NCBI GenBank assembly: GCA_964252035.1 | Contig: CAXUOO010000178.1 | Length of the DNA stretch: 61,777 nt | DNA from: Podarcis erhardii | Lineage: Eukaryota | Direction: 5' to 3' (one strand) | Shown: positions 12,242-53,595 of the stretch, piece after piece | Position numbering within the stretch: the stretch's first letter is position 1 | Layout: every line of letters begins with the position of its first letter | Notes under the pieces: model-generated | Databases searched by the model: none | What the model saw: the letters and a program-made list of their open reading frames with translations, nothing else | What the model was told of the DNA's origin: nothing | Made by a program: the position numbers and the translations under genes

Positions 12242-14557
12242 TTGTTCTGCTTGTGCTGTTGCTGCAATGCAGACAGCAGCAACAGTAAAGGTAGCACAAA
12301 GCAAAAATTATTCATCTGTGGGTTTGATCAAAGTGTAAGATAGAGGTATGATTTTGATACGCAGATACAATTTAAGAATAGATAGTGTATTATGTGTAAG
12401 TTTTATCTACACATGTATATGAAATGTATGCATAGTCAGGTAACCACCTACGTGGAGGAAAACACACATGTATGCCTGTCTGAGACACTGGGAGGCTTCT
12501 GCACGGCAGCCGGAAGGGAGCAGACGGAGAAGACTCACGGTTTAGAGCACAGCATTGACTGAGGTGTGCTTCACACATTTACTCGCGCATACGAACATAC
12601 ACATAAAATTCTTTGTGGATAACTGGCAGCCTGTATAAATCAGATACTTCCGTTAAGATACACGTGTATGTACAAAATATTTGAAAAAAAGGTTTTGTAC
12701 ATAAGGCACAGCGTGCAATGAACCCTCATGCTTAAATATAATTTAAATGCAACAACAGTCTTAACTAGCAGTGACAATTGATGCACAGGCAGCACACTGG
12801 AGCAACGGCAGTTGCTAGCAAGTAGCAGCACCAACAACGGCTGCCGCGCGACCAATGCAACAGCAGCAAAGAAACAACGAAATGACACAAGCATAGAGAG
12901 GAAAGGTAGTAAAAGTACTTGTACTGGCACAAGTAACGACTGCCGCAGAGAAATCAGCAAGAGCATGAGAAGATACATTTTCACACAGCCACGCTACGCC
13001 CGAAAGCTTTATTGCTAATATCAACTTGCAAAGGCAGAAAACTATTTCACCCAGATCCTAAGTATAGTTGTTTTGCGCGTGAAGAGCCACTTATAAAGCG
13101 CAACCATCAGGCTGATTCACAGCATCTGTGTTTGTCTAATAAAACGTCACATGAAATCGAGGATTTCTAGCAGCATCAGTCATGTACGTCACGTGTTGCC
13201 TGTCTTTAAAATTTTATATACACAGGCGACAGCGCCGCCAAGTAGAGGGCAACTGACGCAGCCTTTTCCTGAGTGATATTACCCCATAAAACACATCGTG
13301 AGACAACACATGGAAGCCCTGCAATCAACAGGGCTTCAGGCATAGACGTCGCGTACAGCACAAGTGAGTCAAAGCAGACGCAGCAGCAGCAGCCTTCGAG
13401 AGCACCTGCGTCGTCGCACAAATAGGCGTAAAGCAATGACTGCAGCAATTTCTCGGTAGTGCACCCGCAAAGGTGTGCTGACTGACAAGATGATAAAAGC
13501 TGTACATTACTAACCGAATCAGTTGTAACAGTGACACACAAACAGGCTATTCATAGACGTACACTACATGCACAGCACAATGCCCCCATGTGGTAGACGA
13601 CCGGAACAGCAGAAAACGCACCATTTGCCTACCTGCAGCGACTGAAGTGGAGGCAGGTACAGCGCCGCCAGGTGGCGCAGTCGAGGCCGTGTTCATCAGG
13701 TGCATCGAAGCTAATTTGTTATCTCCTACGCTAGTTGTCCAGTCTATACGCTGAAGCTGCTGCGTGAATGGAAATAATCAGCAGAAGATGGCACAGTTGC
13801 TGCTCAAAGTTTGCAGGTGCTGTATGATGAATGTACAAGATCATGCCACTTCTAGTCGAAAAAGCTACCAGGACCTCAAATGCAACGCTCAAAAGGAAGT
13901 GCTGGTGTCCCAATAGTAGAAAGCTAGTTGAGAAGGGGCTTATATTAGTTGTAGCCGAAGAAGAAAGAGAGCTGCTGCAAAGTCATGAGCAAAGATGCTA
14001 CCAGTTGCTCAAAGATAACCAGCAGCTAGTGAGTGAATGTAAATTTGTGGGGGCTTCAAAAAAACAGTAAAAGCAAAACAAGGAAAAAGAGATCAATACA
14101 AAGGAAAGCGAGGATTGAAAAGATCTCGAAAGAGTGAGTGTGACGAAGAACGAATGAAGCGGCCACCGAAGGCAAGGAAGAGAGCAGACGAGGCCAATGT
14201 GCTGAGCAATCGAACAAGTGGAGGCCTGAAAAAAAGGAACACACGATGCAGAGAGTTGAGAAAAGCAGATAGGTGAGGTGAAAAGGGGACAGGAAAGAAG
14301 GAAAAAGCCGAACCGATATGGAAACGAAAAAAGGAAGCGGACGTGGGAACGCTGTATCGCAGAAACGGCAGCCAGCTGAAAACCGCTGTAACAGCACGCC
14401 AATGCACGAGATTTGCCGCGACGTAGCGAAGCAACCACGGAAGGGGACAGAGTGTCTGAGCGAGAGTATAATGGAAAAAAAATAAAAATAAAGATGAACT
14501 GGCGGTATCCTTAAGCAGCTGACACAAAAAAAGAGTAAAATAAATTTACATTCTGAA

Positions 14558-14660
14558 TGGTTTGAAACACCACTGCTGCGTCATTACCAATTGAACCTAC
14601 ACTGAGTGGTTTGGAAACAACACTGCCGCGGCATTACCAGTTGTAACTAAACACTCCGAG
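14558..14660. repeat. Imperfect tandem repeat, period ~49 bp x2 (copy A only)
   Basis: tggtttg(g)aaac..cactgc.gcg.cattacca.ttg at 14558 and 14607. Copy B has a single unit near 35122. Confidence 0.8.
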
Positions 14661-17600
14661 CCCCTTCCTACAAAAAAGTGCAGAATCAGCTTTTCCTTGG
14701 ATTTGCGAAGAAGGATTAAAACGGATTGAGAAAACTACAAAAATGGACAGTCGGATTGACAGAATTACAAAGATGGACATTCAAAACTGCGCATATACCG
14801 CCGCTTATTCCACTGTGCTGGTATTGGGATTGAATACTTTACGTGTGTATCTCAGGCACGAGTCCTGCGTTATCCCTGTCCATACTTCCTGTTGGCTCGG
14901 CTGTCGTAGTACTGGTGCTCGTTGTTGTTTGGTCATTGAGGTTGCTGCTTCGCCAGATGCTTGTGTGAGCCGAGCAGCAGTCGCTAGTGCTGCTATACTT
15001 TCGAGGGGGGAGGGAAATGGTTGTCGTTGTCGGTGTGGTTCTCGAACATTCTCTGCTGTGCCAGCAATCAGTGCCACTGTTGCTGGTGCAGCTAGTTGCT
15101 GTGTGGTATCAATAGTAAGCTGTTATCTTTACAGCGGCAACGACTGAAGTAGCAAAAGAGAAAAAACGGTATACAGAAATTACATTATCGCAGGGAGGCT
15201 TACTGACGAGGCCTGTACTTCAGTTTAAATGCAATCTGCAGTTGCTGGGCTTCCAATGAGGCGGTTGATCCCGCAGCTCCAAGTGTGGCTCTCTCTCTGT
15301 TAGCTACCTGGTAAAAAATGCTGCCGCATCACTCGAAAATGGCTGACCATGTTGCTAAGTTCTGGTCACTTTCCACCACCACGTGCTGCGTGGGTTCGGA
15401 ACTATCTCGCTCTGCGCGGCTACATAAGATCCAACGCGTAATTGGCTACACCTAGGGAGCATTCCGACCGCCGGCTAGGCTGTACCCACAGGGCAGCCGA
15501 CTACGGTTAGAGGGGCGAGAGACATTTTACTCATGAAGGCTAGCAACCGGCACCCACAGCCAAAAAGTGGTCTATGAAAGAGAACCGGCATTAAACTCTT
15601 TCCTTTTGTTGTAACCTTTCAACACGTGCGTCCTCTGATCTGACCATAATCACGTTACATATGGGACAACGGCAAAAATTTGCAGCTCCGCGCGCCGCTG
15701 AGCAGCTCAGTTGACGAATCGGCTATGGTACTCCTTTTTCCTCAAATCTTCTTCTCCTTGGGAGATGCGCTTTCAACTCAGTAAAATCGAAGTTTGAACA
15801 CGCGAAGTGAGTGAGATAGATTAGTAGCTTTCAGTTTACTAACAAGAAATTACGAAGGAGCCTTGCTGCACATTTCGACTAAAAGAGTGGAAGTTATACG
15901 ACACTACGGCTATCTAGGTTTTGTTGTGCACATTTACTTTGTCACCCTTGCATTCTTCCGCAAGCATCTCTGGCACTTCGATCGTCTCAGGCCAAGAAAA
16001 CGCCACTATTGGCGGTTTAGTTATACCGTATGTGTTCGTGCGTGTAGGCGAAAATACATAACATGGCATAAAGATCTTCAAGCTCACGTCGAACTTTGTC
16101 ACAATTTGTGTAATGTATAGTGTTCTTGTCCCAGGTATTTACCACGTATTCGGGTGGATATGCGGCGGCGCAATGGCTGCCGCGACGGTTATTTTCAACC
16201 ACTTTCTGGCGTCCTGCTCCTGTGCCCATACTACCGTTAGCATACGGCAGTAATATGCAAGTAGAAAACTAAACTACATTAACTACGAAAAGTCGAGATT
16301 TTCTCCTTGATAACTTCTACCTTTTTAAGAGCGCTGCTGATTGTGTACCGTAAAGCTAATCAATCACCGGTATTATAGTCGTCTTCCGTAGTGAATAACC
16401 TTTATGTACAAATATACACATATTTTGACAGTATACATAAAGCGTACATACAGTTCGATCTTATCAAAATGGAAATAACACTGTGCATTTGAGTGGACTC
16501 CATTAAATATATGTCTATGCTTCTACGACTTGATGTTTACATTTCATTCCTCCTAGAAGTGCGTTCATTCGGCAGCTTTGTCCGAGTAAAGGTGACTAAG
16601 TTTCCATGCATATACTGATTTTAAAAACCTTGCAGGTTTTCAATGTCATACCTGCCATAGGGGAACATCTAGACACGAAAGCACCCTTGCATCTGGTGTT
16701 CGGCCGGAAAAATCGCTGTTCCTTTACTGCGCATCCAGTCCTTCTCACTGGTAGTCATCCTGCTTACAAACGAATCTTCTTTGCAATTTTGTGTGACTGG
16801 TCAGCCTCTCAATAGACCTACATTGAGGGTGTCTACAAGCAGCTTGCAACTCATAATGATGGTACGCGTATATAAGATATAAAGGCCAGATTTTTGGGTA
16901 TAGAGTACCAGTTTTATTGAACTGACACCATGTTTTATCATTGGGGATCTATTTTGGAATTCATCTGTCCTGTATTTTCTGCTAAGCTGTTTCCTATTCC
17001 CTGTTTTTACCAGACTCATTTGTACTACAAAGGTTTTTCCACATCGCTTTCTCTCTGACTGGCTCACACGTATGTCCACTGTGTGTGTCTTCTTCCTGTT
17101 TGGTTTGTTTTAGCTGTCCCTTGTTTGTAAATTACTTAATACCTGCAATAATGTTTCACACCACTGCACAACCTGCAATCACTTTTCTTTGTTCCCAAGC
17201 GCTCGGTAGCGTTGCGTTGCTATTGGGTGATTTTTTGCTTCACGATTGCGCTCTTCCTATCGCGAGATGGCGGTAAAGGTGCTATCGCAGTTCTTGTTCA
17301 TTTTGCGGGTGGTTCTCAGTCTTATGCGTCGGTAATTTTTTTCTGTAACAGCCACTCCACGTGCGCGTATAGCCTCTCCTACTTGCATGTTTGTGCGCAT
17401 TAAAATATGGACTATCTATAAACGGGCATAGACATGCGCAAAAATGAGCAAGGCCCTTTGATTCAGTGTGTATTCTGTCTCGCCGCATCTTCACGTACAT
17501 AAACACTCGAATTCGTATCAACTTGCACTTGTTAGGATTAGATAGGATTTCTTTACATCGGTTATAAACGAAGCTTTTTTATAGCAGCTTGAACTAATGT

Positions 17601-18254
17601 CTACCGTCACTCAATTGAACGGTCACAAAGCAACCAGTTCCTCCAGCTGCGCTGCTGCTGCTAAAAAAGAAGAAAGAAACACGTAGACCTACATATGCGT
17701 AGCCGTGTTTCAAATCACTCAACCGTATCACACACGTACTTGTTCAGATTCGACTCCTAAACAGACGTGCTCTACACCTGTAATTTTCCGTGAGAGCAGG
17801 CCTCATTTCCATTTCAAGTTCATACATATACGTATGCGTATTTTCTATGCACATACGTATATGCATATATACATATTTTTTTTTCAGTAGTATTTTCGTG
17901 GAGTTGCCTGTACTGATACATGTGCACCTTTGCATACGTTCACACACATATGAGTATCTATGAAACGTGCAAGCCTACTGCTGGGCGTAGAGCGGAACCA
18001 TAGACATTAGCAGTGTAGAGAGTTCACATCTAGCTGATCTGTTTACACAGCTCAGATTTACGTGAAAATTGCAGCCACATTGTTTCTGAAATATTTTTTG
18101 GTGCTGCTTGTTCAGTTGCGCAAGTTCGCAGGCAGCTCACTAGCTGAACACAAGAACGACGGAGGCACACTAGCCATCGCGGCTTGTAACTGTAATAGCC
18201 GCAACATCAGCTATTTTTCGCTTCAGCAGCAACTTTGGCAGAAGCGGGGTTATA

Positions 18255-21200
18255 ATGAGGCAGTCTTACGCGCTCCGCCGTACAGCAATGAACTCAGCCA
18301 AATGGGATACCAATAGCAACAGCAACACCCCCAGCACCAGTCAAAGCGCGAAACGCAAACACTTTAATGTATTTAGTAGGGTTGGACTCTATGACTGCGC
18401 GTATTTTTCGAAGTATTCATGCGGGTACGCGTGGAATCAAGCGGACACACAGAAGCGGCCACCGCAGCAAAGTCTATTACTGGTTTTCATGGTGCTACTG
18501 GGCATGCTGCTGATGCTGCAATTCAGCGTCTTTGTTGCGCTGCTGACAGGCAGTCTACTGCAGGCTGACGCTAAGTAAGTGATTCTACACAGTAGCTCAA
18601 GCCAAAATGAGCAATAATGAGGTCCCGGGCTATATTTTACCAGCAGCATCGAAAAGCCGCAGGAGTGACATGAAAGACGATCGCAATAACAATGGCAGTA
18701 ACTGCAGCACATTATCACACTTAGCACCCAGTACAAGCGCTTATTTTGCAGAAAAACGAAAAGGGAAAAGCGATCGAAACAGCAAAAGGATTAGCAGTGA
18801 AGATGCCCACAGCAGCAGAAACATCGCTATCAACAACCGCAACACTAATGTAGACTTATGCATCAATCAAACCTTTAGCAACTTTTGCTGCAACTCTTTC
18901 CATTTTGTGAGATATTATGCCACGTTGGTGTTCGTCAAGCAGCTCTATGTACTGTTGCTGCTGATAGGTTGACCACTGTGTTTTCCACGAGATGTGGAAC
19001 TTGGAAGGAAAAGTGTTGACCCAGCACTACAGCTTACAATCTGTTGCTGTTGAGTAGTCACTATATATGCATGAAAAACATAGTAGTCGAGGAAACTGTG
19101 ACGAGAAATTAGCCGTTCTCATTTATCGGTGTGTTTTGTGAGTCTGCACGTTGTCTCAGAAGCACGGGTCCTGCATAGCTTCCGTCTGCTTGTACGTTTG
19201 GCATTATAAGTATCCAGCTGAGTGTTAGGTAAATATACTCAATTCAATTCACAAGACACTTGCCTCAAATTATAACTCATTTGAATGCTTCTCGCTCTGC
19301 GTAATGGAAAATACTATGCTCATACTTTGTACACTAGTCTCTGAAGGAAGTTCTCGTAAGCTTGTTCTGAAAGTCAGGCGTTGATCACATTATTTTTACG
19401 TGTTAGAGAGAGAGTATAACAAAGAGAGAGAGAGTAACAAGAAGCAAGTGTATATACTGCGAATACTTAGAAGGAGCGGGTCATAGGTGCAGCCACATCC
19501 GTTACTACTCAAACATTACGTCTAGCCAGCTTCAGTCCGCTCTGAATCTCTTTGTCGGCTGTTCGAACTTTCAGGCTTTCGCGGCAAGCGGAATTTGGCA
19601 AGCAAACGTCCGCGCTAGCGGATAAGCCAAAGACAGACGTAGCAGTACCGCAGTCAGCGACAGCGGCAGCAGAAGGATCCACTGCGCATACACATTTGTC
19701 AGAAGAAGCTGTAGCAGAGATTTTGCAAGAATCTGTCTTCCCGTATGCGTATTCATGCCTTACAAGCCTAGCAGCCACCATACCTCTCGCGCTCGTAAGG
19801 AAACGCAGCAGCTTCCTACCGTATCCACACGAGACATAAGTACACCATCTACAAGAAGGCAGCCGCGCTGATAGCTGCGAACGCATCAGAAGCAGCAGAA
19901 CGCTCCCCGAAACAGACAGGAGCAGCGCAACATCACTAGCATTCTGCGGTGGCCGCATTGAAATGCAATAAGCATGATGGCAGAAGCAGGTTCTGTACCG
20001 GTAGCCAGAATAGTAGGATCGAATAGCCATAAGAATCCTTTAGCATAGTTTAGAGTGCCTTGCCTGGCTTAGGCGGTAGAACAAATGTGGTTATAATGAT
20101 GAATATTCAGTGGAAAAGAAACAGCGTTTGCTAGCTTCGTGTATTTGCAGATGTAGTGGAAGTATGAATATGAACTTAGTAGACTATTGAAATTTTTCGC
20201 TGCACGAGACTCGGCTAGTGCATGCGCACGCGACCGTGGCGTATTGTCTCCAAAATAATTATGCATATGGACACTATATATATATATATATATATATATA
20301 AGCACATGTGGATACTTGTATATACTTCTGCAGCTGGAAACAATGACAAAAAAATGGTTAGACCGACAGGAAAGAATGCAAAAGCACAGAGGAGTATTGT
20401 GAATCGATTCAATTTGCGTTCACGCATACTCATTCGCTCGATAAAAGATGATGAAGTCATAAAGGCAAAATGATTTTATACACCTGCAGCACATCATCCA
20501 GTTCACTTGCGTCTGGGTATACTATTGTTGCTGCAGATAATTCTGGTCTGTTTCACGTCGTACAGCAGTACATCTGTGAAGGAGAAAACCTCTTCTACTA
20601 CTTTGTTAAGCGTTCGACCACTAGCAGATGGTGCTATCGCCGCCCGAGCGCTACGGTACAGTCGTGGGTGCGGTAGCAGCGAGAGACGGAGCTGGAGCAG
20701 CAGAAGCGACAGGCCGTGCGAAGACGTTTTTTGCCATACAAGACTTAAAAGAAATGAGCAGCAGTCTTTGGAGTCGCCTGCTGCTGTGCAGAAACGCATT
20801 CTGCAAAGGCAGCTTAAAAAGACAACCTCAGTGCCTCTAGCACACCAACCAATGCGGCAACAAGAATACCAGCAGAGACACCAAAACAGCGACAGTAGCA
20901 GCAAACAAAAACACATGACAGCAGCAGCCGATCAGCAAGTACACTTAACGAGCTGCTGGGAGAACATTTCAACAAGTTCTGCTGCCCGACGCACCTTGAG
21001 CAGCTCCAGTAGATTAGGAAACTTGACACGCTTCCGCATGAGCAGGGCGGCAAGGGGTGACAGCAGGCGGCGCCGAAATCGCGCAGCTATTGCAGGGTTA
21101 AAGGCAGAAGCTGGAGAAAAAGCGACTCCAGTGCGAACACTAATGTTCGCGTGTTATCTAGTGGGATTTTGCGTCTCGATCACTTTTTTTGCAGTTGCAA

Positions 21201-24200
21201 GAGTACCTCAAGCCGCGGTAAGCAAACATATATGTGTACAGTTTTCAGTAGCCTACGCTCATTCAAGAAGTATAGAAAACTTTTAGGCATGTTTATATCA
21301 GAATACTTTCTCTCTAGGTATCTGAGCTTTTTCCGTGCTTGACGCAGATTCCTACATATCATTCAGCATCTCTACGCATTCCTTCGCAACTGCTCTAATT
21401 CTTGTGCAGGCTATTTCTGGATTAAAAAACACGCATTTGTCAATTTTTGAAGCTGCTGATATCACGGTTTTTGCTACTATGTTGTACCCCTCTCGCGACT
21501 ACAGTCTCCTTTTTGTCAACTTGCGCGTTGCTTAGACCATGTTTTCCATTAGCCAGACTCAGCACATAACCAAGAATGGCATACAGGACAATACACTGAT
21601 ACATATACATATATATACATATACATATATATATATATGTTTTTAGGTAAGTGCATTGAATATAGGTGAAACTATTTACATAATTTCGTATGTGTATGCA
21701 GAAAGAATGCACATACATGTACATATAACTCAGATATCATACTGAGAAAATTGCAATATGACAGCCTCATATAACTCTGTCGCTACAACATGAATTTGGT
21801 GCGTCAATCTTATACGTCTCTATCTGTTTTTGGTGCGGATTGAGCTGCAGTGTGGAAAAACATGCCCAATACACTGGACAAGTATGCACAGCGCAGCAGA
21901 ATGGCTTTTCTTGTTTTTATTTCTTTTCTGGTGGAGCGGTGCGCTTCTTGCACTGCATCTCTACATTTTAAAACAAAAACACCCGCCAGTATATTATCTG
22001 CGAGGAGTCCTCACGCGCACAAGCCGAGACCATCTCGCACCACAAAACCGGCAGCGACTAACGCCCCAGCACACAACCCGTCAAACGCAGTTTTCCCAGT
22101 CAGAACAACAGCTGGAACGGCACCATCCCCAGCTTCACCAGCAGCAGATGCACCAGAAGCAGGAACAACTTGTGCAAAAGCAGCAGCAAGATCGAAAGGC
22201 TTTAGACGCTCCTCCTGCTTTACCTGTCCCTGCAACGGCTTGCGGAGAAAGCGGCGTCAGTAGAGAGTTGCCTCTATGCTCTGGACTCTGCGACACCAGC
22301 GAAGTATTACGTGCTTTACAGTGTGATAGCAACGACAGCATTAGTGCATTCGACGAGAGTCACACACGCAAGGACTGCAGCAGCGTTGGCAGCTGCAGCA
22401 CTAGGAACAGCTTCAGCTCCACGAGATCCAAATCCGATTGTGTGTCAGATGTTTCAAATGCCTCCCGGCTCTCTAAACGCTCTTTTTCCGAAACAAGTCT
22501 GGACTCATGTGGTTCTCACTCGCGTGGACAGATGCAGAGTCTCAGTTCAGGGTCTCCCTCATTTGGTGCTGCTGTTCATCCAGATCCGCACACTACGCAG
22601 AAACAGCTACTTCACCAAGCACACGTGTTGCCGCTACTTCAGCGCAACTGCAGCAGCACCGCAGGAAGCAGTGAACATTATTATGCGGAGTGCAGCACTG
22701 AGACCACCTGCTGCACCACTAGCAGCAACAGCGAATTTAGTTCGCCTCTGTCTTCGGAAGACCGCAGCCCTGAAGAAAGAAACACCATCGATCTGCAACA
22801 GCTAACACGCGACTCTCCACAAGGTTTTGCCTCTCTAGCGTCTTTTCTGGCAAGAGCAGCAACAGCAGCAGACGAAACACCCACCGGAGCACTATGTGCA
22901 CCTAGTTTGCCAAGCAATTCTTGCGGCCACTCGATAACAACGCAGGCAGCGTCTGCCATATTTGAATCCGAAATTCACACTACAGCAGAGGCTACTGCTT
23001 TGGCAGATGGCAGTTTCGTGGTGCCGCGTACAGAGGAAGCTTCCAGCAGCAGACACGCTAAAGAATCAGAGGCTCCTCGAGCACCATCAAGACCAGTTCG
23101 CCCAAGCGTTGTTATTTGCAATTCTACGGTTTTAAGTGAAGGCCATTGCGTGCAACGAACACCGTGCAATAGAAATTTGCATGCATCCACGCCGCCAAAT
23201 CATCAGGAGTTAAGTGGTGGAAAAACTTTTAGCAACGAGCGTGCCGACAGAGAAAGCAGGCTTATTTAGACCTCCCCCATCAGCTGCACCAACGTGAAGA
23301 GCAGCAGACTCAACTACAGGTATCTTATACGCAGTCTAACCAGAAGGAAAGTTCTCCTTCTCTGCATCAACAGCAACAAGAACCTCCGTTCGCTAACCGA
23401 CAGCTGCAGCCAGTACCGATATTGCAGCTATCCCCTGCCGACTATCAGAAACAGCTCCAGCAGCGGCTTCATGAGTTGTCCCAGCAGCGTTTGCATCAAC
23501 TGGATGAGGCCCATTTACAGGAATCACGGCACCATTCACTTCAGCAGCAACTGCATACAGGATTCACTGCAGGAGAAAAGAGAGTCGGGACAGGACTAGC
23601 ACAACAAGATTGCGGGAAAGATGCTGGATTGCTGCAGGTGTTGTGGCCGCTTGCTGGCGAGCAGCAGGCAACGTTGCTGCAGCGAGTTTTTGGTAGAAGA
23701 ACACCAAAATTGGCTGCTGTACTCCCACGGAAAAGAACTTCCACTCTGGGGAAGCTTTATCACATAAGAGGAGTTTACTCGCGTCGACAGTCTACACCGG
23801 ACTCGTTCAGACATGATGCAGCTACTTTCGGCAATTTGCTTCAGCAGCAGCACCAGCTGCATGCGCCGCTTCCTGTCGTGAGAGGGCGCCAATCACGTCA
23901 TAGTCTCAAGGAAAGCATGTAAATTGCAGCAGCCGCCCCGCTGTGTGCTTTGTTTTTTTAAAGCTGCGGTGAAGAATACCTCGTTTGTGTTGTGGCAGAA
24001 ACAACTGCTAATAATGTTGTGTCTCATCGCCACACATTTGGGGAGAGTCAAAAACGCTGGCAAAAAAGCGCATAGGCAGCTTAGCAGAGCACTTGAATCG
24101 ACAAAGTGAGATGTTCGATCAGCCGTATGAGTGATAATACGTGATGGGTGAAGTCTTATAGCAAACCATCACAGGCACTATAAGCAGAGCCAGCGGCAGG

Positions 24201-24457
24201 ACAATTAGAGCTTGTCCAGCTGCAACGGCAGCAGCAGCGATGTCAAAGACGAAGCCGTTAAGCAGACAATATATGCGCAGTCGGTGTGCGGCGCAGCTGG
24301 ACGGCTTGCCCAGGTAGAAGCGTCACCATTGTACGCGCAGCAACAGGAGAACGCGAATATTCACGTTGCATGTAACCATATATCCTAAGAATTACCCCCA
24401 CCTGGGCACTTCCAGAGGCGCACCTTCACCCAGCTGCAAACGTGGAACAAATCATGA
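18255..24457 (+). pseudogene. Copy A of the multi-pass membrane protein gene, disrupted (+1 frameshift and premature TAA)
   Basis: Exons 18255-18574, 19575-19794, 19940-20000, 20490-21217, (optional 21410-21526), 21851-23918 and 24220-24457 use the same splice sites and phases as copy B. A5 at 23221-23225 versus A4 in copy B truncates the frame at 23269. TAA at 24386-24388 aligns with GAA in copy B. The A-run could be a sequencing error. Confidence 0.7.
20275..20300. repeat. (TA)n microsatellite, intronic in copy A and absent at the matching position in copy B
   Basis: Read directly from the sequence. Confidence 0.95.
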
Positions 24458-26879
24458 CTCGTGAACAGAGAGAAAAAATTGAAGAGAACGTGTACTACCT
24501 GAAAACAGCGTAGTATCCTGCTTAGGATCGACATGCTCTCGTGCCGGTCAAAATGTGAAACAGATAGCGGCTGAGAAATCCAGATTTTACTGATCCTTCA
24601 AAGAATTAGCAGTTCAAGAAGACAAACAGTGCACTGTATTGTTGATAGGCTTTGGTGCTCTCAAATGGTGAAGTAAAAGTTGAAGATGGCTACGCAGAAC
24701 GACACGTCAATCAAAGCCAGGCTGCATTTTGACCGGCAATTTTTTTTGCGATATTGCTAGCCTGACAGCAAGACGAAGCGGAACAGAAGCCGTGATCCGT
24801 CAATTTCAAAAGTTTGATGCTTTCGCCTCTTAGTGCATAAGATGCAAAAGCCGCAGAAATTGTACAGTGCAAAAACCCACACTGGTCAACGTTCTTTAGC
24901 TTGGAACTTATACGTGTAGAGGCTTTTCCAGTGCTGATCAAATATACATATACAAGTATATTCATTTTTGTTATAAGGCAATGATATCAGAATGTGTACC
25001 ATTTTGATATGACACGGGAATAAGGTCTTGCGTTCCGTTAGAGGCTTTGTTCCATAGTGTTACGCATTCCGCAAGAGGGAGATTTCCTCTCATTTCCTCT
25101 CGCTCATATCGCTTATTCCGTGAGGACACCCTCAGTCCTATACGTGCACTATATCGCTGCTTTCAAATACAGCGTGGTAGGACAGCAAATTGCATTTGCC
25201 GCTGTAAAGGTACAAATCGGTTCAATATATTTTAGGCGAGCACCACGAGATTTTACAAATGTAGTTGCTGGTGCTCAGCGCGTCAGCAAGGTCCAAATGG
25301 TCTTTTTCAACTATCGATTATAGCGCAAAAGGATAGGGAAGGGAAACTCCGAACCGTGTATGCATATATGGTGGTCCTAAATCTGCGTGCTTCCCGCTGC
25401 AGTTTAGACAGAGTTACAATATGCATTGCTGCGTGGAAACGGCATGTTGCGTTTGGAACAAAGGACGTTCTACACTAAAAACAGCTGCAGCAGCTCATCA
25501 TGCGCCGCTAGCACACTAACAGACGTCGAATATCTGCTGTGGCTCGACAACGCATGCACTTGTACAGCTGTAAATCAGTTTGTTTACTTTACGCGTCTTG
25601 AAATGAGAAACAACTAATCGCAGAATAACACTTATTTACATTATGAATAGTCTTATGGAGAATCTACTATGTGCAAAGACTGTGAGTAGAGCGGTTCTAT
25701 GGCTGAATTTCAGCGTGGAATATACATGGGAAATGGGAGAACTACTCCGCCAGTGTTGCACAGCATGTGCAGGTAAACAACACCAACACCTGGAGAAAAC
25801 TAGTACCAGTGTCGCACAGCACGCGCAACTGAAGTTCCCCAGTTGTTATGGGAAGGTCAACGCAAATAAAGACAGCGCAGCCTCGAGAACAGAATCACTA
25901 TATTCTGAACCGCTGGCTACTTCCAAAGTTTTCGTTTTGAAGTCTAATATAAAGCATGATTTCTACAAAGACTACCTGTCATGGTTTTTGCTGTGAAGAG
26001 TGCTAAAACTTTCACTACATCAAGAAAAAGCGGTAAAAAATGTTTCAAACAACTGTGAGTACACAATTTCTAATTTGCAGTGTTAGCATCTGAGTCACAA
26101 TAGATCACGTTTTCTCGGCTTGAACCTGGAAACCAACAACTACTATATATATATATACTATATTGCAGCCAGGAAATCATAAAGTGACAGCGCTTCACCT
26201 GACTTGCCACATGCAACGAGTTTGCTAGAAATTATATGAATTCTTGTGCAAAATTGTTTCCAACGTAATCGCAAATTGAAGCGAACATCGTATGATCATA
26301 AAAATCCCTGCAAATTCGTGAAGCTTTTGCTTGCAGACTACTCATTGTCAAACTCAGCTGAATTCCTTCACAAATCACATATTCTCTTTTATGCGTAAAT
26401 ACGTATGGCTTCGTATACATGGCATATACCGGACACAAGTAGGTACAAATATATATATCTACCTACGTACATCCATATGCTATCCAAACCTCACTGCAAA
26501 CATCTTTGACAGCGTTTACAATTTTTAGAACTCCAGTGCGTAATTAATGAGTCCATTCGCGAAAATGTCAAAAGCAGGGAACCAGCTTTATATGGGTGAC
26601 CGTTTCTGCCTTAAGGTCTTCTCCGGCAGAGAAAGAACTCTCCTTCCCACACCTTTGAGTGAGATAAAACCCTCATGCTGTGTCCAACAGAGGAATCACG
26701 CAGCTGAGGGGTCAGCCTTCGCATACAGCTTCACACCACTGACCTCGGCAGCAACACGTGGAAATTCTATATATAAAACTGTGAGATGTCATGAAGCATC
26801 CTGCACTTCAAAGTTGAGTTAACATCCATATGTTGTTCTTCATATAGATCTTGCAAGACGAGACAAGTTCAATAAAATA

Positions 26880-29800
26880 GTACTTAAAAGTAAGAGACGT
26901 ACTCACCTACACAGCATATCTGAAGCGCCCCCGTCAAAACCCAAGGAGAATTCGGCTCGCATCCAGAAGGTCTGGATTATTGTTGTAGTCGTCGCCTGAA
27001 TTGTATATACCGTCGCTTGCATATGGCGGAACGTGTGCGAAGAAAGGTCGCATCAATGGGTTCTGTGGTATTGTCGCCGCGCAGGTGCCTCAGGATGGCC
27101 TATGTGATAGTAAAGTTGTAGAGCAAATCTTATAAACGTGAGTTTGAATTAGTTTATACATTCCCAGGTAAAATCACGGTTAGTAGTCCTGAATTAATCA
27201 AAGCTGTTGGATGCTGTGCAGCACTTGTTTTCGGTGGTAGGACAAAGAGTACGCTGACATACGCATCAGCCACGCCGAGGCATCAGAACACATGTAGTCA
27301 CCGAGTAATCTTTTTTGTTTGATTGTGCTGCAAAGGCGCTCATTCACTATAGCCCATTATGATATCACGCTGATCTGGCACCTAGGTGCTGTACGTGCGC
27401 CGACAGAATTTCAATAGACCGTCACTACTTTTACACATATAATACTGTCGCTTGGATTATATAACTCCATTAAAGCAATGCAATATTTGTATCGTTAAAC
27501 GCAAAGCTTTTCTTAGCCAGTGGAGAAAGACAAATTTAAAATGTGTTTTTTACACATTTTGGTAGCAGCCCCGTTTAAAAGCCAAGTACTGAAGCAAAGT
27601 AACAATGAATTGCTGGAGAGTTTAACTTTTCTCGTCTATTATCTGAAGTACGTTTCCTGTTAGAATTCAAGAGAGGAAGAAGAATATACTGTGCGAGAAT
27701 AAAGTACGAATCTTTCTGCAATGTGCTACGTTATTCTATGCATTGTGTGGCTGAACATATGCCATACTTTCTCTCTGCCATAAATCCAGAAGACTACGAA
27801 ATTGAAACTTCTTCCATTACCGCTACATTTCACATACTAGTTTCGTCTCTCGATCAACAGAGGATACGCACGTCTGTGTAAAACACCCATCCATTTGCAT
27901 CAGCAAAGTACAGCAATAAAGAGGCTATCAGCAACTTGTATCGTGGACAAACATTTAACTTAGAAATCTGACTTTTTTCATAGAACGATACCACCTCTTC
28001 CTGCTACCCGTCATAGAATGCGCAGGAAGTAAATTGATTACGCTACGGCGACATAGCTGCTGCTGTTCTCTCGACCCTTTGACTGCGCAGACATGAATAG
28101 TAGGCTTTATCCTATTAGCAAAAAAAGACAATAATGTTCGAACAAACGTGAAAAGGAGTATGATACTGCCGTTCTTGCGAAGTACCTCACGTACTGAAAC
28201 CTCGGTATGATTAGCAGGCGAGCATTACGTACTTGCGAATACTCTTAATTGGAGTGTCAGAGAAGATGGTAGTAGAAAGCTGGACGAGGGATTAAGGACG
28301 AGTCTCGCAAATTGATGCTTATATTTATATATACATATATATTTGACTCGCCGCACAGGAAGACAGTCCTGACTGTGCCGGTCGCTCGTCATCCGGTCGG
28401 TCAAAATGTTCAATCAAATCAAGATAGAGCTGACAGCGACCAGGCTCCCTCAGTTGCATATACAGTTATGCAATTATAAGGAGTAAATATACTACGTTTC
28501 CAATGATTTCTGCTTTTATGAGCTGGTTGATACAATCTGAAAACGCTGCGTTCCCAGCAATTACTGAATTTTTGAAAGATTTGATGCTTGGCAATAATGG
28601 TTTTACGGCGCACGGGAAAGAATTCGTAATGATCAAAAGTCACAGCCTGCTGGATTCTGAAGACTTCTCTTCTTGAAGTTCCCACCAAAGAATGGCGAAA
28701 CAAAGAAATATTTTTGCCGATCAATAAGCAAACGGTGAAAAATTATTGCTATTGGACTTCGCTTGTAGAGTCATTCCATTTATCATCCCGTTTTGAGTAC
28801 TATTCTTCGTCAGTTTTCCTAGTAAGACGAAAAGCAATGGTTGTTTTCAAATTCGAGTTGTTCATAGCTCCCCAGCTTATATTTTCTTATATACTAAAGC
28901 GCCGTCGAATGAATCAAAATCTACGATATATCGCTCATTAACATTATTGCGTTTGGGATGGTAACGCGAACTGCTTGTCGCAGTCAAACTCTTACATTTT
29001 TTTTTTGCAAACATCAGCTTCAACGAGGAACAAAAAGCTTGCTACGCATTTTGCGACTCTTTTGTATGCACCTGCGCTGTTCCCAAAACGCCTAAGCAAG
29101 AGATACGCACGGTATTGAGGGAGCGGCCAAGTCTACAGTACACCGTTTCAGCCATTCATTTCTCCATTTGAGTTGTTATAACGAGTCATGTTCTTCCTTG
29201 CTTTGATCTCTCTACTGTGCGTTTGTCCGTGTGCAGTCGATGCTTGGATACCGAGCTTGTATGAGTACTATATGTTGTCTGTGTGATAGTAGTCACCCAG
29301 CGATCCCCATTTAGACCACATGGCAAACACTATGCAAGATCAACTGTAGGTGTGTATATACCGCGTATTCGAGATATACACACTTGTAAAAGAGTCTCTG
29401 CGGAGGAAAAATTGTACACGTATACCATTATTTTTAGCTTGTCTAAGTATAAATATGGAGACAAATGCCTACTGTATAACTGTTCTAAAGTGAATAACCT
29501 GTAGCCTGCAGGAAAACTCAAAAACGCAGTTGTGTCAAGGCAACGCTTGGCGGTATCCCATTAGAATCTAGATTTCAACTCCATCACCCTGGAGTCCTTC
29601 GACAGGCAATCTCTTACTCGCAACGAGTAAACCCTTTGAGTTTATATTTTGGACAAAGTGCAGCTTCCATGCCTTTAAACCTTGAGTACATGACTTCTAA
29701 TATGCTGCATCGAATTATTTTGCACAACCGTCTTACCTGCGTATGTTTACATACATGTGTAATTTGTTCTGCAGGGGCACTCATAAAGAACTGTGTGTGT

Positions 29801-38693: not shown

Positions 38694-41600
38694 ATGAGGC
38701 AGCAACATTACACGTCTCACTGTTCAAGAATAAGAACAGCTTCAGCTAAAGTGGACACCAGTAGCATCAGCAGCCCTCGCAGCCCGGGTGAAACCTCAAC
38801 ACGCGACAGAAGAGTTGGGGCAAGCAGCAGTTGTAGGGGAAAAGCTTTTCAGCGCTCGAGAGAGCAGCCGCCTCCTTTTGCTGCTGCAGAGCGGCCACGT
38901 ATCAATAACAAAATACCCAGCGAACGTAATAGCGTTGGCACCAGGGGCTTCTCTTTCGTTTCAAAGTATTTATGCGGTTACGCATGGAATCAGGCAGAGA
39001 CGCAGATGCGGCCGCCCCAGCAGAGACTTTTATTGGTTTTCGTGGTGCTACTGGGCATGCTGCTAGTGCTGCAATTCAGCGTGTTCATTGTGCTGCTGAC
39101 AGGCAGTCTACTGCAGGCTGACGCTACGTGAGTGACTCTGTACAGTAGCCTAAATCATTCTGAGCAATAGTAGTGACGAGGGTTATGGTTTTTACCAGCA
39201 GCGTCGGTATGCCACAGAAGCGACATGAAAGACGATCGCAATAGCAGCGGCAGCAATTCTAGCACGTCAAAACACCCAACGCCCACTACAAGCGCTCATT
39301 CTGCAGTAAACACGACAAACGGAAAAAGCACTCTGAATAGATGATGATTGATGTAGATGTCCGCAGCAGCAGCAGCAGCATCGTGACCAAAAGCCGCGAC
39401 ACGAGTGTAGACCCGTCCATCAGATCTAACCATCAGCACCTATCGTTGCAGCTCCTTCGTTAGTGTGAGACTTCATTTTGTGTTGGTGTTCTTCGCGCAG
39501 CTATATGTACTGTTGCTGTTGGTTGGTCAACAACGGCTTTCACCACGAGAAGTGGAACTTAGAATGAAAGGAGTCAACCCACCACTATCGCTTACGACAT
39601 GCTGCTGTTAAGTAGTCACTACATATGCATAAAAAACAAAAACAAAAAAACAGAGTATTCGTGCAAACTGTGACGGAAAATTGGCTGACCTCGCTTATGC
39701 GTGAGTTTTAGAATTATCTACGTCATCTTGTACGTTTGGCGATTAAACTATATTGTTGAGTTTTAGATCATAATAATCCACTCCATTTACAAAAACTTGC
39801 CTCTTATCACAATTCATTTGCGTGCGTCTCGTCTTGCATAATTGAAAATTATCATGCTCCTACTTCGTACACTGTTCTGTGAAGACAGTTTTCGTAGATT
39901 TGCTCTAAAAGTCAGGTGTCGATAACATGAGAGGAAGAAATTTACTACGTTTTTTTCGTATTGAAGAGAGAATGAAAAAAAGCAAGTACATATATTGCAA
40001 ACAGGCACATCCGCTTCTACGCAAACATCACATCTAGCCAGCTTCAGTACTCTGAATTTCGTTGTTGGCTGTCTGAATATTCAGGCTTTCGCGGCAAGCA
40101 GCATTTGACGAGCAAACGTCCGCGAGAGTGGATAAGGCAAAGACAGAAACAGCAGTACCCCAGCCAGCGACAGCGGCAGCAGAAGGATCGACTGCTCATC
40201 CACATTTGTCAGACCAAGTTGTAGCAAAGGTTATGCAAGAAGCTGTCTTTCCCTATGCGTATTCATGCCTTATAAGCCTTGCAGCCACCATACCTCTCGC
40301 GCTCGTAAGAAAACGCTGCAGCATCCTATATTCCGAAGCAACCGTATTCGTTGGGACGCGAGCACAGAGTACACCATCTACAACAAGCCTGCCGCGCTGA
40401 TAGCTGCAAAAAGATCAGAAGCAGCAAAGCGGCAGTGCCCAAAACAGACAAGCGCAGCACAACAATTCTAGCATTCTGCAGAAGCCGCACTAAAGCGCGA
40501 TAAGCATGATGGCAGAGACAGGAGAAGCTGTCTCGGTAGTCAGTATAGCAGGATCGAATAGCCGTACCACTCCTTTTGTGTAGTCCAGAGTGGCGTGCCT
40601 AGCTCAGGAGGGATAACATATGTGGATCTGATGATGTTTCCCTCAGTGGCTTAGAAAAGCGTTTGTTAACTTTTTAGATTTGCATATGTAATGGACGTAC
40701 GAGCATTGTCAAAGTAATCTACTCAAATTTGTCGATATATGTGCAACCGCGAGCGTCGCTTATCGTCGCCGAAATGAACATACACATATAGCTACTAGTA
40801 TATACATCTGCAGCTCGACACAATGACAACAAAATAGATAAGACAGGAAACAATGCAGGAGAACAGAAGAGTATTGTGAACCAATCTAATTTGCGTACAC
40901 GCATACGCATTCGCTCGGTAAGAAGATGATGAAGTCATAAAGGCAAAATGATTTTATACACCTGCAGCACATCAACCAGTTCACTTGCGTCTGGGTATAC
41001 TATTGTTGCTGCAGATAATTCTGGTCTGTTTCACGTCGTATAGCAGTACATCTGTGAAGGAGAAAACCTCTTCTACTACTTCGTTAAGCGTTCGACCACT
41101 AGCAGATGGTGCTATCGCCGCCCGAGCGCAACGGTACAGTCGTGGGTGCGGTAGCAGCGAGAGACGGAACTGGAGCAGCAGAAGCGACAGGCCGTGCGAA
41201 GACGTTTGTTGCCATAAAAGGCTTAAAAGAGATGAGCAGCAGTCTTTGGAGTCGCCTGCTGCTGTGCAGAAACGCATTCTGCAAAGCCAGTTTAAAAAGA
41301 CAACCTCAGTGCCTCTAGCACACCAACCAATGCGGCAACAAGAATACCAGCAGAGACACCAAAACAGCGACAGTAGCAGCAAACAAAAACACATGACAGC
41401 AGCAGCCGATCAGCAAGTACACTTAACGAGCTGCTGGGAGAACATTTCAACAAGTTCTGCTGCCCGACGCACCTTGAGCAGCTCCAGTAGATTAGGAAAC
41501 TTGACACGCTTCCGCATGAGCAGGGCGGCAAGGGGTGACAGCAGGCGGCGCCGAAATCGCGCAGCTATTGCAGGGTTAAAGGCAGAAGCTGGAGAAAAAG

Positions 41601-44600
41601 CGACTCCAGTGCGAACACTAATGTTCGCGTGTTATCTAGTGGGATTTTGCGTCTCGATCACTTTTTTTGCAGCTGCAAGAGTACCTCAAACCGCGGTAAG
41701 CAAACATATATGTGTACAGTTTTCAGTAGCCTACGCTCATTCAAGAAGTATAGAAAACTTTTAGGCATGTTTATATCAGAATACTTTCTCTCTAGGTATT
41801 TGAGCTTTTTCCGTGCTTGACGCAGATTCCTACATATCAGTCAGCATCTCTACGCATTCCTTCGCAACTGCTCTAGTTCTTGTGCAGGCTATATCTGGAT
41901 TAAAAAACACGCATTTGTCAATTTTTGAAGCTGCTGCTATCACGGTTTTTGCTACTATGTTGTACCCCTCTCGCGACTACAGTCTCCTTTTTGTCAACTT
42001 GCGCGTAGCTTAAACCATGTTTTCCATTAGCCAGACTCAGCACATAACCAAGAATGGCATACAGGACAATACACTGATACATATACATATATATACATAT
42101 ACATATATATATATATGTTTTTAGGTAAGTGCATTGAATATAGGTGAAACTATTTACATAATTTCGTATGTGTATGCAGAAAGAATGCACATACATGTAC
42201 ATATAACTCAGATATCATACTGAGAAAATTGCAATATGACAGCCTCATATAACTCTGTCGCTACAACATGAATTTGGTGCGTCATTCTTATACGTCTCTA
42301 TCTGTTTTTGGTGCGGATTGAGCTGCAGTGTGGAAAAACATGCCCAATACACTGGACAAGTATGCACAGCGCAGCAGAATGGCTTTTCTTGTTTTTATTT
42401 CTTTTTTGGTGGAGCGGCGCGTTTTTTGCACTGCATCTCTACATTTTAAGACGAAAACACCCGCCAATATATGATTTGCGAGGAGTCCTCACGCGCACAT
42501 GCCGAGACCATCTCGCACCACAAAACCGGCAGCGACTAGCGCCCCAGCACATAACCCGTCAAACGCAGTTTTTCCAGTCAGAACAACAGCTGGAACGGCA
42601 CCATCCCCAGCTTCACCAGCAGCAGATGCACCAGAAGCAGGAACAACTTGTGCAAAAGCAGCAGCAAGACCGAAAGGCTTTAGGCGCTCCTCCTGCTTTA
42701 CCTGTCCCTGCAACGGCTTGCGGAGAAAGCGGCGTCAGTAGAGAGTTGCCTCTATGCTCTGGACTCTGCGACACCAGCGAAGTATTACGTGCTTTACAGT
42801 GTGATAGCAACGACAGCATTAGTGCATTCGACGAGAGTCACACACGCAAGGACTGCAGCAGCGTCGGCAGCTGCAGCACTAAAAACAGCATCGGCTGCAC
42901 GAGATCCAAATCCGATTGTGTGTCAGATGTTTCAAATGCCTCCCGGCTCTCTAAACGCTCTTTTTCCGAAACAAGTCTGGACTCATGTGGTTCTCATTCG
43001 CGTGGACAGGTGCAGAACCTCAGATCAGGGTCTCCCTCATTTGGTGCTGCTGTTCATCCAGATCCGCACACTACGCAGAAACAGCTACTTCACCAAGCAC
43101 ACGTGTTGCCGCTACTTCAGCGCAACTGCAGCAGCACCGCAGGAAGCAGTGAACATTATTATGCGGAGTGCAGCACTGAGACCACCTGCTGCACCACTAG
43201 CAGCAACAGCGAATTTAGTTCGCCTCTGTCTTCGGAAGACCGCAGCCCTGAAGAAAGAAACACCATCGATCTGCAACAGCTAACACGCGACTCTCCACAA
43301 GGTTTTGCCTCTCTAGCGTCTTTTCTGGCAAGAGCAGCAACAGCAGCAGACGAAACACCCACCGGAGCACTATGTGCACCTAGTTTGCCAAGCAATTCTT
43401 GCGGCCACTCGATAACAACGCAGGCAGCGTCTGCCATATTTGAATCCGAAATTCACACTACAGCAGAGGCTACTGCTTTGGCAGATGGCAGTTTCGTGGT
43501 GCCGCGTACAGAGGAAGCTTCCAGCAGCAGACACGCTAAAGAATCAGAGGCTCCTCGAGCACCATCAGGACCAGTTCGCCCAAGCGTTGTTATTTGCAAT
43601 TCGACGGTTTTAAGTGAAGGCCATTGCGTGCAACGAACACCGTGCAATAGAAATTTGCATGCATCCACGCCGCCAAATCATCAGGAGTTAAGTGGTGGAA
43701 AACTTTTAGCAACGAGCGTGCCGACAGAGAAAGCAGGCTTATTTAGACCTCCCCATCAGCTGCACCAACGTGAAGAGCAGCAGACTCAACTACAGGTATC
43801 TTATACGCAGTCTAACCAGAAGGAAAGTTCTCCTTCTCTGCATCAACAGCAACAAGAACCTCCGTTCGCTAACCGACAGCTGCAGCCAGTACCGATATTG
43901 CCGCTATCCCCTGCCGACTATCAGAAACAGCTCCAGCAGCGGCTTCATGAGTTGTCCCAGCAGCGTTTGCATCAACTGGATGAGGCCCATTTACAGGAAT
44001 CACGGCACCATTCACTTCAGCAGCAACTGCATACAGGATTCACTGCAGGAGAAAAGAGAGTCGGGACAGGACTAGCACAACAAGATTGCGGGAAAGATGC
44101 TGGATTGCTGCAGGTGCTGTGGCCAGTTGCTGGCGAGCAGCAGGCAACGTTGCTGCAGCGAGTTTTTGATAGAGGAACATCGAAGTTTGCTGCTGTACTC
44201 CCACGGAAAAGAACTTCCACTCTGGGGAAGCTTTATCACGTGAGTGGAGTTTACTCGCGTCGACAGTCTACACCGGACTCGTTCAGACATGATGCAGCTA
44301 CTTTCGGCAATTTGCTTCAGCAGCAGCACCAGCTGCATGCGCCGCTTCCTGTCGTGAGAGGGCGCCAATCACGTCATAGTCTCAAGGAAAGCATGTAAAT
44401 TGCAGCAGCCGCCCCGCTGTGTGCTTTGTTTTTCTAAAGCTGCGGTGAAGAATACCTCGTTTGTGCTGTGGCAGAAACAACTGCAAAGGTATATTTGCAG
44501 CTGCTAATAATGTTTTGTCTCATCGCCACACATTTGGAGAGAGTCAAAAACGCTGGCAAAGAAGCGCATAGGCAGCTTAGCAGAGCACTTGAACCGCTAA

Positions 44601-53554: not shown

Positions 53555-53595
<41 letters not shown>

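What the first reader, a model, noticed from the sequence alone, without database searches (positions are those of the whole stretch)
20447..23640. Mosaic identity: old paralogs with a freshly homogenised core (gene-conversion tract)
Seen: coding exon 2 differs at 27 of 220 nt (hand count), while intronic 21541-21840 differs from 42019-42318 at only 1 of 300 nt and keeps an identical (TA/CA) microsatellite. Identity jumps abruptly at ~20447/40925, just before exon 4, and falls off after ~23640. Small mismatch clusters occur at 21930-22050 and 22380-22560. Inference: recent or recurrent ectopic gene conversion that homogenises TM3-TM5 and the tail while the N-terminal half (TM1-TM2 and loops) stays paralog-specific. 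This pattern is typical of receptor or antigen families under diversifying pressure.
Basis: partly seen in the sequence, partly recalled or inferred. Interest (0 to 1): 0.7.

Follow-up and report, generated by a model that had tools for sequence, protein, structure and literature searches.

The report
Gene-conversion mosaic between two tandem paralogs
Two old neighbouring copies of an orphan membrane-protein gene, probably from a parasite assembled along with a lizard genome, have recently and repeatedly copied their 3' halves onto each other; this is a clean but ordinary case of gene conversion.

Summary
The two gene copies lie 20.5 kb apart. They differ by 23.6% over 18365-20444, by 1.6% over 20445-23640, then by 4.5%, 11.8% and 33% further 3'. 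The 3' edge is a staircase that ends near 25312, not a fall at 23640.

Ectopic gene conversion is well supported.
- Introns, synonymous sites and a microsatellite are homogenised as much as coding sites.
- Read-derived contigs reproduce both copy types with the assembly's difference counts.
- Related lineages lie about 8% from both copies where the copies are identical, while the flanks differ 24-33% between copies.
- The differences sit in short islands of old-level divergence, so conversion was patchy or repeated.

The reading "receptor or antigen family under diversifying pressure" is not supported. dN/dS is 0.29-0.9 in the 5' exons. The last exon has no relatives among 1.84 billion protein representatives.

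The scan has noted conversion mosaics before on other DNA of this assembly (lizard CBR1-like and ZIC1/ZIC4 genes), not at this locus.

Two 1-bp frameshifts in copy A look like homopolymer assembly errors.

The parts
20445..23640 (+). Copy A, youngest homogenised core. Its partner in copy B is 40923-44116. 52 differences in 3196 columns (1.6%), and only 0.5% over 22547-23640.
40923..44116 (+). Copy B, youngest homogenised core (offset 20478, falling to 20476).
   Evidence: X1 contig r2 links the copy-B-specific 5' flank to this tract.
23641..25312 (+). Copy A, 3' staircase: 23641-24864 at 4.5% and 24865-25312 at 11.8%. The partner is 44117 to about 45814. It consists of near-identical blocks broken by ever denser islands of old-level divergence, and it runs past the stop codon at 23919.
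18406..20444 (+). Copy A, old paralogous flank (about 23% diverged, many indels). The partner is 38959-40922. It holds putative exons 1-3.
19490..19819 (+). Block of intermediate divergence (about 13.5%) covering putative exon 2 (19576-19794) and about 85 nt of upstream intron. The partner is about 40001-40328. It may be an older conversion layer: dS is 0.146 here against 0.48 in exon 1, and the differences show no codon periodicity.
18255..18573 (+). Putative exon 1 of copy A, from the ATG to a GTAAGT donor. In copy B it is 38694-39126, with a GTGAGT donor. The conserved hydrophobic segment lies at 18474-18530. Differences over 18406-18573 fall 15:3:4 by codon position, and dN/dS over 18381-18572 is 0.29.
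   Evidence: The splice sites are inferred from sequence only.
20491..21217 (+). Putative exon 4 of copy A, from a CAG acceptor at 20488-20490 to a GTAAGC donor at 21218. In copy B it is 40969-41695. Hydrophobic segments lie at 20501-20557 and 21131-21187. There are 13 differences between the copies, 11 of them amino-acid changing.
   Evidence: The splice sites are inferred.
21851..23919 (+). Putative last exon of copy A, with a hydrophobic segment at 21905-21961 and a long low-complexity tail. In copy B it is 42329-44395, inside an uninterrupted 708-codon open frame (42272-44395).
21599..21638 (.). Intronic ATACAT/TA microsatellite, letter-for-letter identical to 42077-42116 in copy B.
20275..20300 (.). 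(TA)13 microsatellite found only in copy A, 145 nt upstream of the sharp 5' edge. It lies in a stretch of indel heterology (20207-20299) that could block heteroduplex extension.
21928..22022 (+). Largest island of old-level divergence inside the core (10 differences in about 95 nt). Smaller islands lie at 22387-22419, 22519-22546, 23693-23712, 24098-24181, 24301-24386, 24595-24607 and 24865-24908.
23221..23274 (+). Two single extra bases in copy A, both in homopolymers: A5 against A4 at 23221 and C5 against C4 at 23274. They break the last-exon frame in copy A only and are probably assembly errors.
   Evidence: The X1 contig r4 has no substitution against copy A but has two gaps, and the one listed is 23221 left out.

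Best explanation
The window holds two old copies of one spliced gene in the same orientation, 20.5 kb apart. The gene encodes an orphan protein with several hydrophobic segments that is otherwise mostly low-complexity. The copies have diverged to 24-33% at unconstrained sites.

Non-reciprocal homologous recombination between them (interlocus gene conversion) has overwritten the 3' half of one copy with the other. The overwritten stretch runs from 46 nt upstream of putative exon 4, through the stop codon, to about 1.4 kb beyond it. Conversion happened more than once or patchily. The youngest layer (20445-23640) is 1.6% diverged. Older layers, or layers converted less often, give the 4.5% and 11.8% steps towards the 3' end. 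Short islands of 17-98 nt keep old-level divergence.

Shown here:
- the mosaic itself and its edges;
- that it does not depend on coding status;
- that read contigs carry both copy types;
- that the copies are closer to each other in the core than to homologues in related lineages.

Inferred:
- the molecular route (double-strand-break repair or synthesis-dependent strand annealing using the neighbouring copy as template, with patchy mismatch repair);
- the direction of transfer;
- the reason for the sharp 5' edge. It may be the end of the most recent event, possibly stabilised because the indel- and microsatellite-rich, 24%-diverged intron just upstream no longer supports heteroduplex.
For: 1. 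Abrupt change of divergence from 23.6% to 1.6% at 20444/20445, with stepped decay on the 3' side.

2. Homogenisation ignores function. Putative intron 21218-21850 has 8 differences in 633 nt (1.3%), against dS of 0.012-0.030 in the converted exons. Differences in the tract show no codon periodicity (4:6:3, 9:11:8, 2:5:6). A 40-nt microsatellite is identical in both copies.

3. Read-derived contigs support the assembly.
- X1 contig r2 runs from the copy-B-specific flank into the tract and differs from copy A at 20 sites over 20445-21590. The assembly has 20 differences there.
- X1 r7 shows 49 differences and the assembly has 49.
- X2 r9 shows 3 against 3, and X2 r11 shows 6 against 6.
- X1 r3, r4, r5 and r6 are copy-A type with no substitutions, and r6 continues into copy A's unique 3' flank.

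4. Rough outgroup test.
- X4 contig r28 is 8.1% from copy A over 22637-22945, where A and B are identical.
- X4 r24 and r31 are copy-A-type flank homologues at 9.5% and 7.5%, where A and B differ by 24-33%.
- X3 contigs are 3-6% away.
- The implied order is: duplication, then the lineage splits, then homogenisation.

5. Differences are strongly clustered. In the core, 17 neighbouring pairs lie within 10 nt (p = 0.0002). The longest clean run is 544 nt (p = 0.004). The two-state hidden Markov model (HMM) gives near-identical blocks (1.5% on average) interrupted by islands at 12.5-29%. B-type island alleles at 24098-24181 are shared by X1, X2, X3 and X4, so the island variation is old.
Against: - All four runs were available only as low-depth (3-6x) de Bruijn contigs, not raw reads.
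- In X1 no region of the core is covered by both copy types at once. The A-type contig for 20311-21590 and the B-type contig for 21650-24097 are absent.
- X1 may be the sample the assembly was built from, so it is not fully independent.
- Orthology of the X3 and X4 contigs is inferred from difference counts only. Their sequences could not be retrieved, so no per-segment tree or GENECONV test with an outgroup was possible.
- Donor and recipient are unknown.
- A third paralogue elsewhere in the genome, as the source of the islands, cannot be excluded.
- The gene model has no RNA support here.
Confidence: 0.85

Rival explanations
1. Assembly artefact. The near-identical core was produced by collapse, by consensus cross-polishing between the copies, or by a false duplication, and the real copies are as diverged there as in the 5' exons.
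For: - The contig is present at low depth in the runs examined (3-6x).
- The assembly carries two probable homopolymer errors in copy A, so polishing was imperfect.
- In X1, only one copy type is seen per stretch of the core.
Against: - X1 contig r2 physically links copy B's diverged flank to a tract that differs from copy A at the same number of sites (20) as in the assembly.
- A-type contigs (r3-r6) match copy A with no substitutions and run into its unique 3' flank.
- X2, from another study, gives B-type contigs in the core with 3 of 3 and 6 of 6 expected differences.
- Cross-polishing erases differences. It would not leave islands of 10-29% divergence that other runs reproduce.
Confidence: 0.04
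2. A single recent replacement event, followed only by point mutation. The event could be one long conversion, a double crossover, or a template switch that copied about 4.8 kb once. There would be no recurrent or patchy conversion.
For: - One sharp 5' edge.
- The youngest blocks have a fairly uniform low divergence of 0.5-1.5%.
Against: - Differences are far from Poisson (coefficient of variation (CV) of spacing 1.7-1.9, p <= 5e-5).
- The 3' side has three distinct divergence levels.
- Island alleles are shared with the more distant X3 and X4 lineages, so they are older than the homogenisation.
- One event with patchy mismatch repair could still explain the islands, but not the steps.
Confidence: 0.08
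3. Purifying selection or a locally low mutation rate keeps the core similar, without any sequence transfer.
For: The core holds most of the coding sequence, including three hydrophobic segments.
Against: - Intron and synonymous divergence are as low as non-synonymous divergence.
- dN/dS in the core is 0.6-1.7.
- There is no codon periodicity.
- A microsatellite is identical in both copies.
- The same stretch is about 8% diverged in X4, as much as the flanks, so it is not slow-evolving.
Confidence: 0.01
4. A young mobile element inserted independently into both copies.
For: - Long open frames without known domains.
- A sharp 5' edge.
Against: - The tract sits at the same colinear position in both copies, inside a gene, and continues exon structure from the old flank.
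- The 3' edge is a gradient, not a terminus.
- The window holds no further copies.
- The contigs listed for X1 over the tract all match one of the two copies.
- No terminal repeats were noted.
Confidence: 0.01

Closest known systems
Gene conversion between neighbouring paralogues of Plasmodium falciparum: DBLMSP/DBLMSP2, and RH2a/RH2b as cited in PMC10919680
   Same: Both involve two neighbouring paralogues of an apicomplexan parasite that exchange sequence non-reciprocally, giving stretches of near-identity next to deeply diverged stretches. PMC10919680 documents conversion between DBLMSP and DBLMSP2. It also notes that conversion between RH2a and RH2b was seen in a cultured isolate.
   Different: - Those genes have known surface or invasion roles and population data. 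Here the protein is an orphan with no relatives and no evidence of diversifying selection.
- From my own memory, not tested: RH2a and RH2b share most of the 5' part and differ at the 3' end, the mirror image of this locus.
Classical concerted evolution of tandem duplicates, such as the human fetal globin genes HBG1/HBG2 (recalled from the literature, not checked here)
   Same: Both are tandem duplicates with a converted block that includes intron sequence. In both, a sharp edge lies in an intron close to a simple-sequence repeat, and older divergence lies outside the block.
   Different: The organism and gene are different. Here the block is about 4.8 kb, with a stepped 3' gradient and many unconverted islands. 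The role of the (TA)n repeat near the edge is only a guess.
Conversion mosaics already noted by this scan in the host part of the same assembly (lizard CBR1-like paralogues, ZIC1/ZIC4)
   Same: The same kind of pattern: old neighbouring duplicates with sharply bounded homogenised segments (notes not checked by me).
   Different: Those are vertebrate host genes of known function, and their converted parts are exon segments. This locus appears to lie on a co-assembled parasite contig, and here the conversion takes in introns and downstream DNA.

Membership tests
Interlocus (ectopic) gene conversion / concerted evolution of tandem paralogues | Mosaic identity: divergence between paralogues changes abruptly along a colinear alignment. 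| tested here: met
   23.6% to 1.6% at 20444/20445. The five-segment model beats one segment by 432 log-likelihood units.
Interlocus (ectopic) gene conversion / concerted evolution of tandem paralogues | Homogenisation is independent of function: introns, synonymous sites and fast-mutating repeats are as similar as replacement sites. | tested here: met
   Intron 1.3%, against dS of 0.012-0.030 and dN of 0.018-0.020. No codon periodicity. Identical microsatellite.
Interlocus (ectopic) gene conversion / concerted evolution of tandem paralogues | In the tract the paralogues are closer to each other than to orthologues of related lineages, and the reverse holds in the flanks. | tested here: met
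   X4 r28 is 8.1% from both copies where A and B are identical. X4 r24 and r31 are 7.5-9.5% from copy A where A and B differ by 24-33%. Caveat: only difference counts of low-depth contigs were available, and orthology is inferred.
Interlocus (ectopic) gene conversion / concerted evolution of tandem paralogues | Both copies exist as such in the reads, not only in the assembly. | tested here: inconclusive
   Both copy types are seen with the expected difference counts, and both junction types are bridged (X1 r2 and r6). But no single run covers the core with both types, and only contigs were available, not raw or long reads.
Interlocus (ectopic) gene conversion / concerted evolution of tandem paralogues | Direct observation of transfer: tract polymorphism among strains, or events in crosses or cultures. 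| not testable with these tools
   X2 contig r15 seems to switch from B-type to A-type between 24747 and 24824, but that could be a de Bruijn chimera.
   Conserved part of exon 1: 0.29. Exon 2: 0.90. In the core, exon 4 gives 1.68, but from only 11 replacement and 2 silent changes.
   No Pfam family. No hit for the 708-residue last exon in the word search or in phmmer against 1.84 billion representatives. Only two copies in the window. The 5' exons were not searched separately, and the joined protein was not searched.

The most novel reading that the evidence does not exclude
The locus may hold a fixed initiation site for recombination in the intron just upstream of exon 4. Repeated, one-directional and patchy conversion would then spread 3'-wards from that site. 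This would explain the knife-sharp 5' edge, the stepped 3' gradient, and the islands that get denser with distance. If so, it is a natural recorder of conversion-tract length and mismatch-repair patchiness in a coccidian-like parasite, where such parameters are essentially unmeasured.
Probability: 0.15. Interest if true: 0.45.

Novelty: new member of a known kind. Interest (0 to 1): 0.3.

Why it matters
It is a tidy, well-bounded example of concerted evolution in an unstudied parasite genome.
- Annotators should expect the two proteins to share a nearly identical C-terminal two-thirds while their N-termini differ.
- Short-read mapping to 20445-25300 and 40923-45814 will be ambiguous.
- Trees built from this gene will mislead unless they are split at 20445.
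- The layered structure could give rough conversion-tract statistics for this group of organisms.

It does not reveal a new mechanism, and it says nothing yet about what the orphan protein does.

Tried and rejected
- Pfam on nine open frames of both copies gave nothing above noise.
- The word search with the 708-residue last exon of copy B found no hit among proteins of 389-1239 residues.
- phmmer of the same exon against 1.84 billion representatives found no hit at E <= 0.001.
- I tried to place the organism through the neighbouring OST3/OST6-like gene (Pfam E = 1.6e-10). Two word searches and one Atlas search were blank. The statement that this is a coccidian co-assembled with a wall lizard therefore rests on earlier scan notes. 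It also rests on indirect signs: introns, an OST3/OST6 domain, no close relatives, and low depth in runs whose contigs total 1.3-1.75 Gb.
- Rfam over 18000-26000 gave only a sub-threshold mir-297 match, which is the (TA)n repeat.
- The findings look-up by sequence was blank, which means nothing.
- I considered unequal crossing-over and rejected it. It would make the whole intergenic spacer identical, yet homology ends at about 25600.
- The joined (spliced) protein was not built or searched. Exons were handled one by one by reference.
Full report
**What is in the sequence**

The window has no N runs and is 44% G+C. Self-BLAST finds one long direct repeat, 18406-25604 against 38959-46071, at 87.7% over 7.3 kb. 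Two weak matches lie further upstream. tblastn of copy-B open frames against copy A adds faint exon-like islands back to 13544/34104. So the duplicated unit is larger than the alignable DNA and is old.

**Checking the observation**

In a MAFFT alignment of 12000-27000 with 32500-47500, identity is at noise level before 18365. It is 70-86% up to 20486 and 94-100% from 20487 to 24866. It then falls to 91%, 86%, 76% and 67%. The list of differences shows the last old-level difference at 20444 and the next at 20497.

A change-point fit with free segment number (best BIC at five segments) gives:
- 18365-20444: 23.6%
- 20445-23640: 1.6%
- 23641-24864: 4.5%
- 24865-25312: 11.8%
- 25313-25700: 32.9%

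After 23640, however, the identity only takes a first step down. The homogenised region is about 4.8 kb.

- 27 differences in exon 2;
- one difference in 21541-21840;
- an identical microsatellite;
- mismatch clusters at 21928-22022 and 22387-22546.

**The gene**

On the + strand both copies have long open frames:
- 270 codons at 20474-21283 and 40952-41761;
- 708 codons at 42272-44395 in copy B.

Hydrophobic segments lie at 18474-18530, 20501-20557, 21131-21187 and 21905-21961. The rest is low-complexity, rich in Q, S and R.

Several points support coding:
- The conserved end of exon 1 shows a 15:3:4 distribution of differences over codon positions and dN/dS of 0.29.
- Both copies have GTAAGT/GTGAGT donors and CAG acceptors at matching places.

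The exon model rests on sequence alone, because no RNA run was on offer.

No relatives were found:
- No Pfam family matches.
- The last exon has no relative in the word search.
- It has none in phmmer against 1.84 billion representatives.

An earlier follow-up on the sister finding reached the same view, an orphan membrane protein that has been duplicated. I did not build or search the joined protein.

**Not selection**

Inside the core:
- The putative intron 21218-21850 differs at 8 of 633 sites.
- Synonymous divergence is 0.012-0.030 and non-synonymous divergence is 0.018-0.020.
- Differences show no codon periodicity.
- A 40-nt microsatellite is identical in both copies.

**Not an assembly artefact, as far as contigs can tell**

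One run (X1, organism A) holds 87% of the stretch's sampled words. Three others (X2 and X3 from organism B, X4 from organism C) hold parts of it. All four are kept as low-depth de Bruijn contigs.

I laid them on 19700-25600 and compared their difference counts with the assembly's.
- X1 contig r2 runs from copy B's diverged flank across the edge. It differs from copy A at 20 sites over 20445-21590, and the assembly has 20 there.
- X1 r7 shows 49 differences against the assembly's 49.
- X2 r9 shows 3 against 3, and X2 r11 shows 6 against 6.
- X1 r3-r6 are A-type with no substitutions, and r6 continues into copy A's unique downstream DNA.

So both copy types and both kinds of junction exist in read-derived sequence.

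The limits are these:
- No run shows both types over the same part of the core.
- X1 may be the assembly's own sample.
- Raw or long reads were not available.

**A rough outgroup test**

- Where A and B are identical (a clean run of 544 nt, 22547-23089), the X4 contig r28 is 8.1% away.
- X3 contigs are 3-6% away.
- In the flanks, X4 has copy-A-type homologues at 7.5-9.5% (r24, r31), where A and B differ by 24-33%.

The implied order is: duplication, then the split of the X4 and X3 lineages, then homogenisation. The core evolves at a normal rate between lineages. That is the signature of concerted evolution.

**Patchy or repeated conversion**

A two-state hidden Markov model splits 20446 to about 25200 into two kinds of stretch. 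One kind is near-identical blocks of 13-1490 nt, 1.5% diverged on average. The other is islands of 17-97 nt at 12.5-29%. The islands get denser towards the 3' end.

Spacing of the differences is far from random:
- 17 close pairs in the core, p = 0.0002;
- coefficient of variation (CV) of spacing 1.7-1.9, p <= 5e-5.

B-type alleles of the 24098-24181 island occur in X1, X2, X3 and X4. A-type alleles occur in X1 and X2. The island variation is therefore older than the homogenisation.

A block of intermediate divergence at 19490-19819 covers exon 2 and adjacent intron. Its dS is 0.146, against 0.48 in exon 1. It may be an older conversion layer.

**Mechanism**

The most likely process is non-crossover homologous repair between the two direct copies, with patchy mismatch correction, repeated over time.

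A simple unequal crossover is excluded. Homology ends at about 25600, and the 8.5-kb spacer is not shared.

The sharp 5' edge may simply be the end of the youngest event. It lies 46 nt upstream of the putative exon 4 acceptor and 145 nt downstream of a copy-specific (TA)13 and indel patch. That patch, together with 24% divergence, could stop heteroduplex extension. This last step is inference.

**What is not supported**

Nothing shows a receptor, an antigen, or diversifying selection.

**Comparison with known cases**

Gene conversion between neighbouring paralogues is well known, including in apicomplexans (PMC10919680). The scan has also noted it in host genes of this same assembly. This is a new, clean example and not a new kind of thing.

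**Organism**

I could not place the organism myself. Earlier scan notes call these contigs a coccidian parasite co-assembled with a wall lizard. What I saw fits that:
- a spliced OST3/OST6-like gene;
- no close relatives for it;
- depth of 3-6 in runs whose contigs total 1.3-1.75 Gb.

Noticed in passing
window 23221 and 23274: Copy A has one extra A (A5 against A4) and one extra C (C5 against C4) relative to copy B. These split its last-exon frame into 21794-23266 and 23233-23919. The X1 contig r4 has no substitution against copy A over 22023-24097, yet it has two gaps, and the one listed is 23221 left out. So these are probably homopolymer errors of the assembly and not a pseudogene.
   Followed up: partly
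window 24657-24907: X2 contig r15 has 6 differences from copy A. That count equals the 6 copy-B-type sites at 24672-24747, yet the contig is copy-A type at 24868 and 24875. It is either a de Bruijn chimera across a 76-nt identical stretch or a polymorphic tract edge in that isolate.
   Followed up: no
window 20311-20993: Two distinct X4 contigs (r25, r26) both cross the 20445 edge. They share four lineage-specific letters (20449C, 20454G, 20581A, 20621G) and the copy-B-type letters 20430G and 20441G. They could be two strains of the copy-B orthologue, or independently homogenised paralogues in that lineage. This is unresolved.
   Followed up: no
window 51891-55134: A spliced OST3/OST6-like gene (Pfam PF04756, E = 1.6e-10 on the 54190-55134 frame). 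It found no relatives in two word searches and one Atlas search, so it is very divergent.
   Followed up: partly
window 24004 / 44481-44500: A 20-nt insertion in copy B, downstream of the stop codon. The X3 contig carries a variant of the same insertion with two changed letters, so the insertion predates that lineage split.
   Followed up: no
window 13544-17186 and 34104-37665: Faint protein-level similarity islands (36-68% over 22-78 residues) lie upstream of exon 1 in both copies. The original duplication was therefore at least 12 kb and may include further exons or another gene.
   Followed up: no
window 46009-46516: A local tandem repeat of about 253 nt (46009-46261 against 46264-46516, 72% identical) lies just past the 3' end of copy B's homology.
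   Followed up: no
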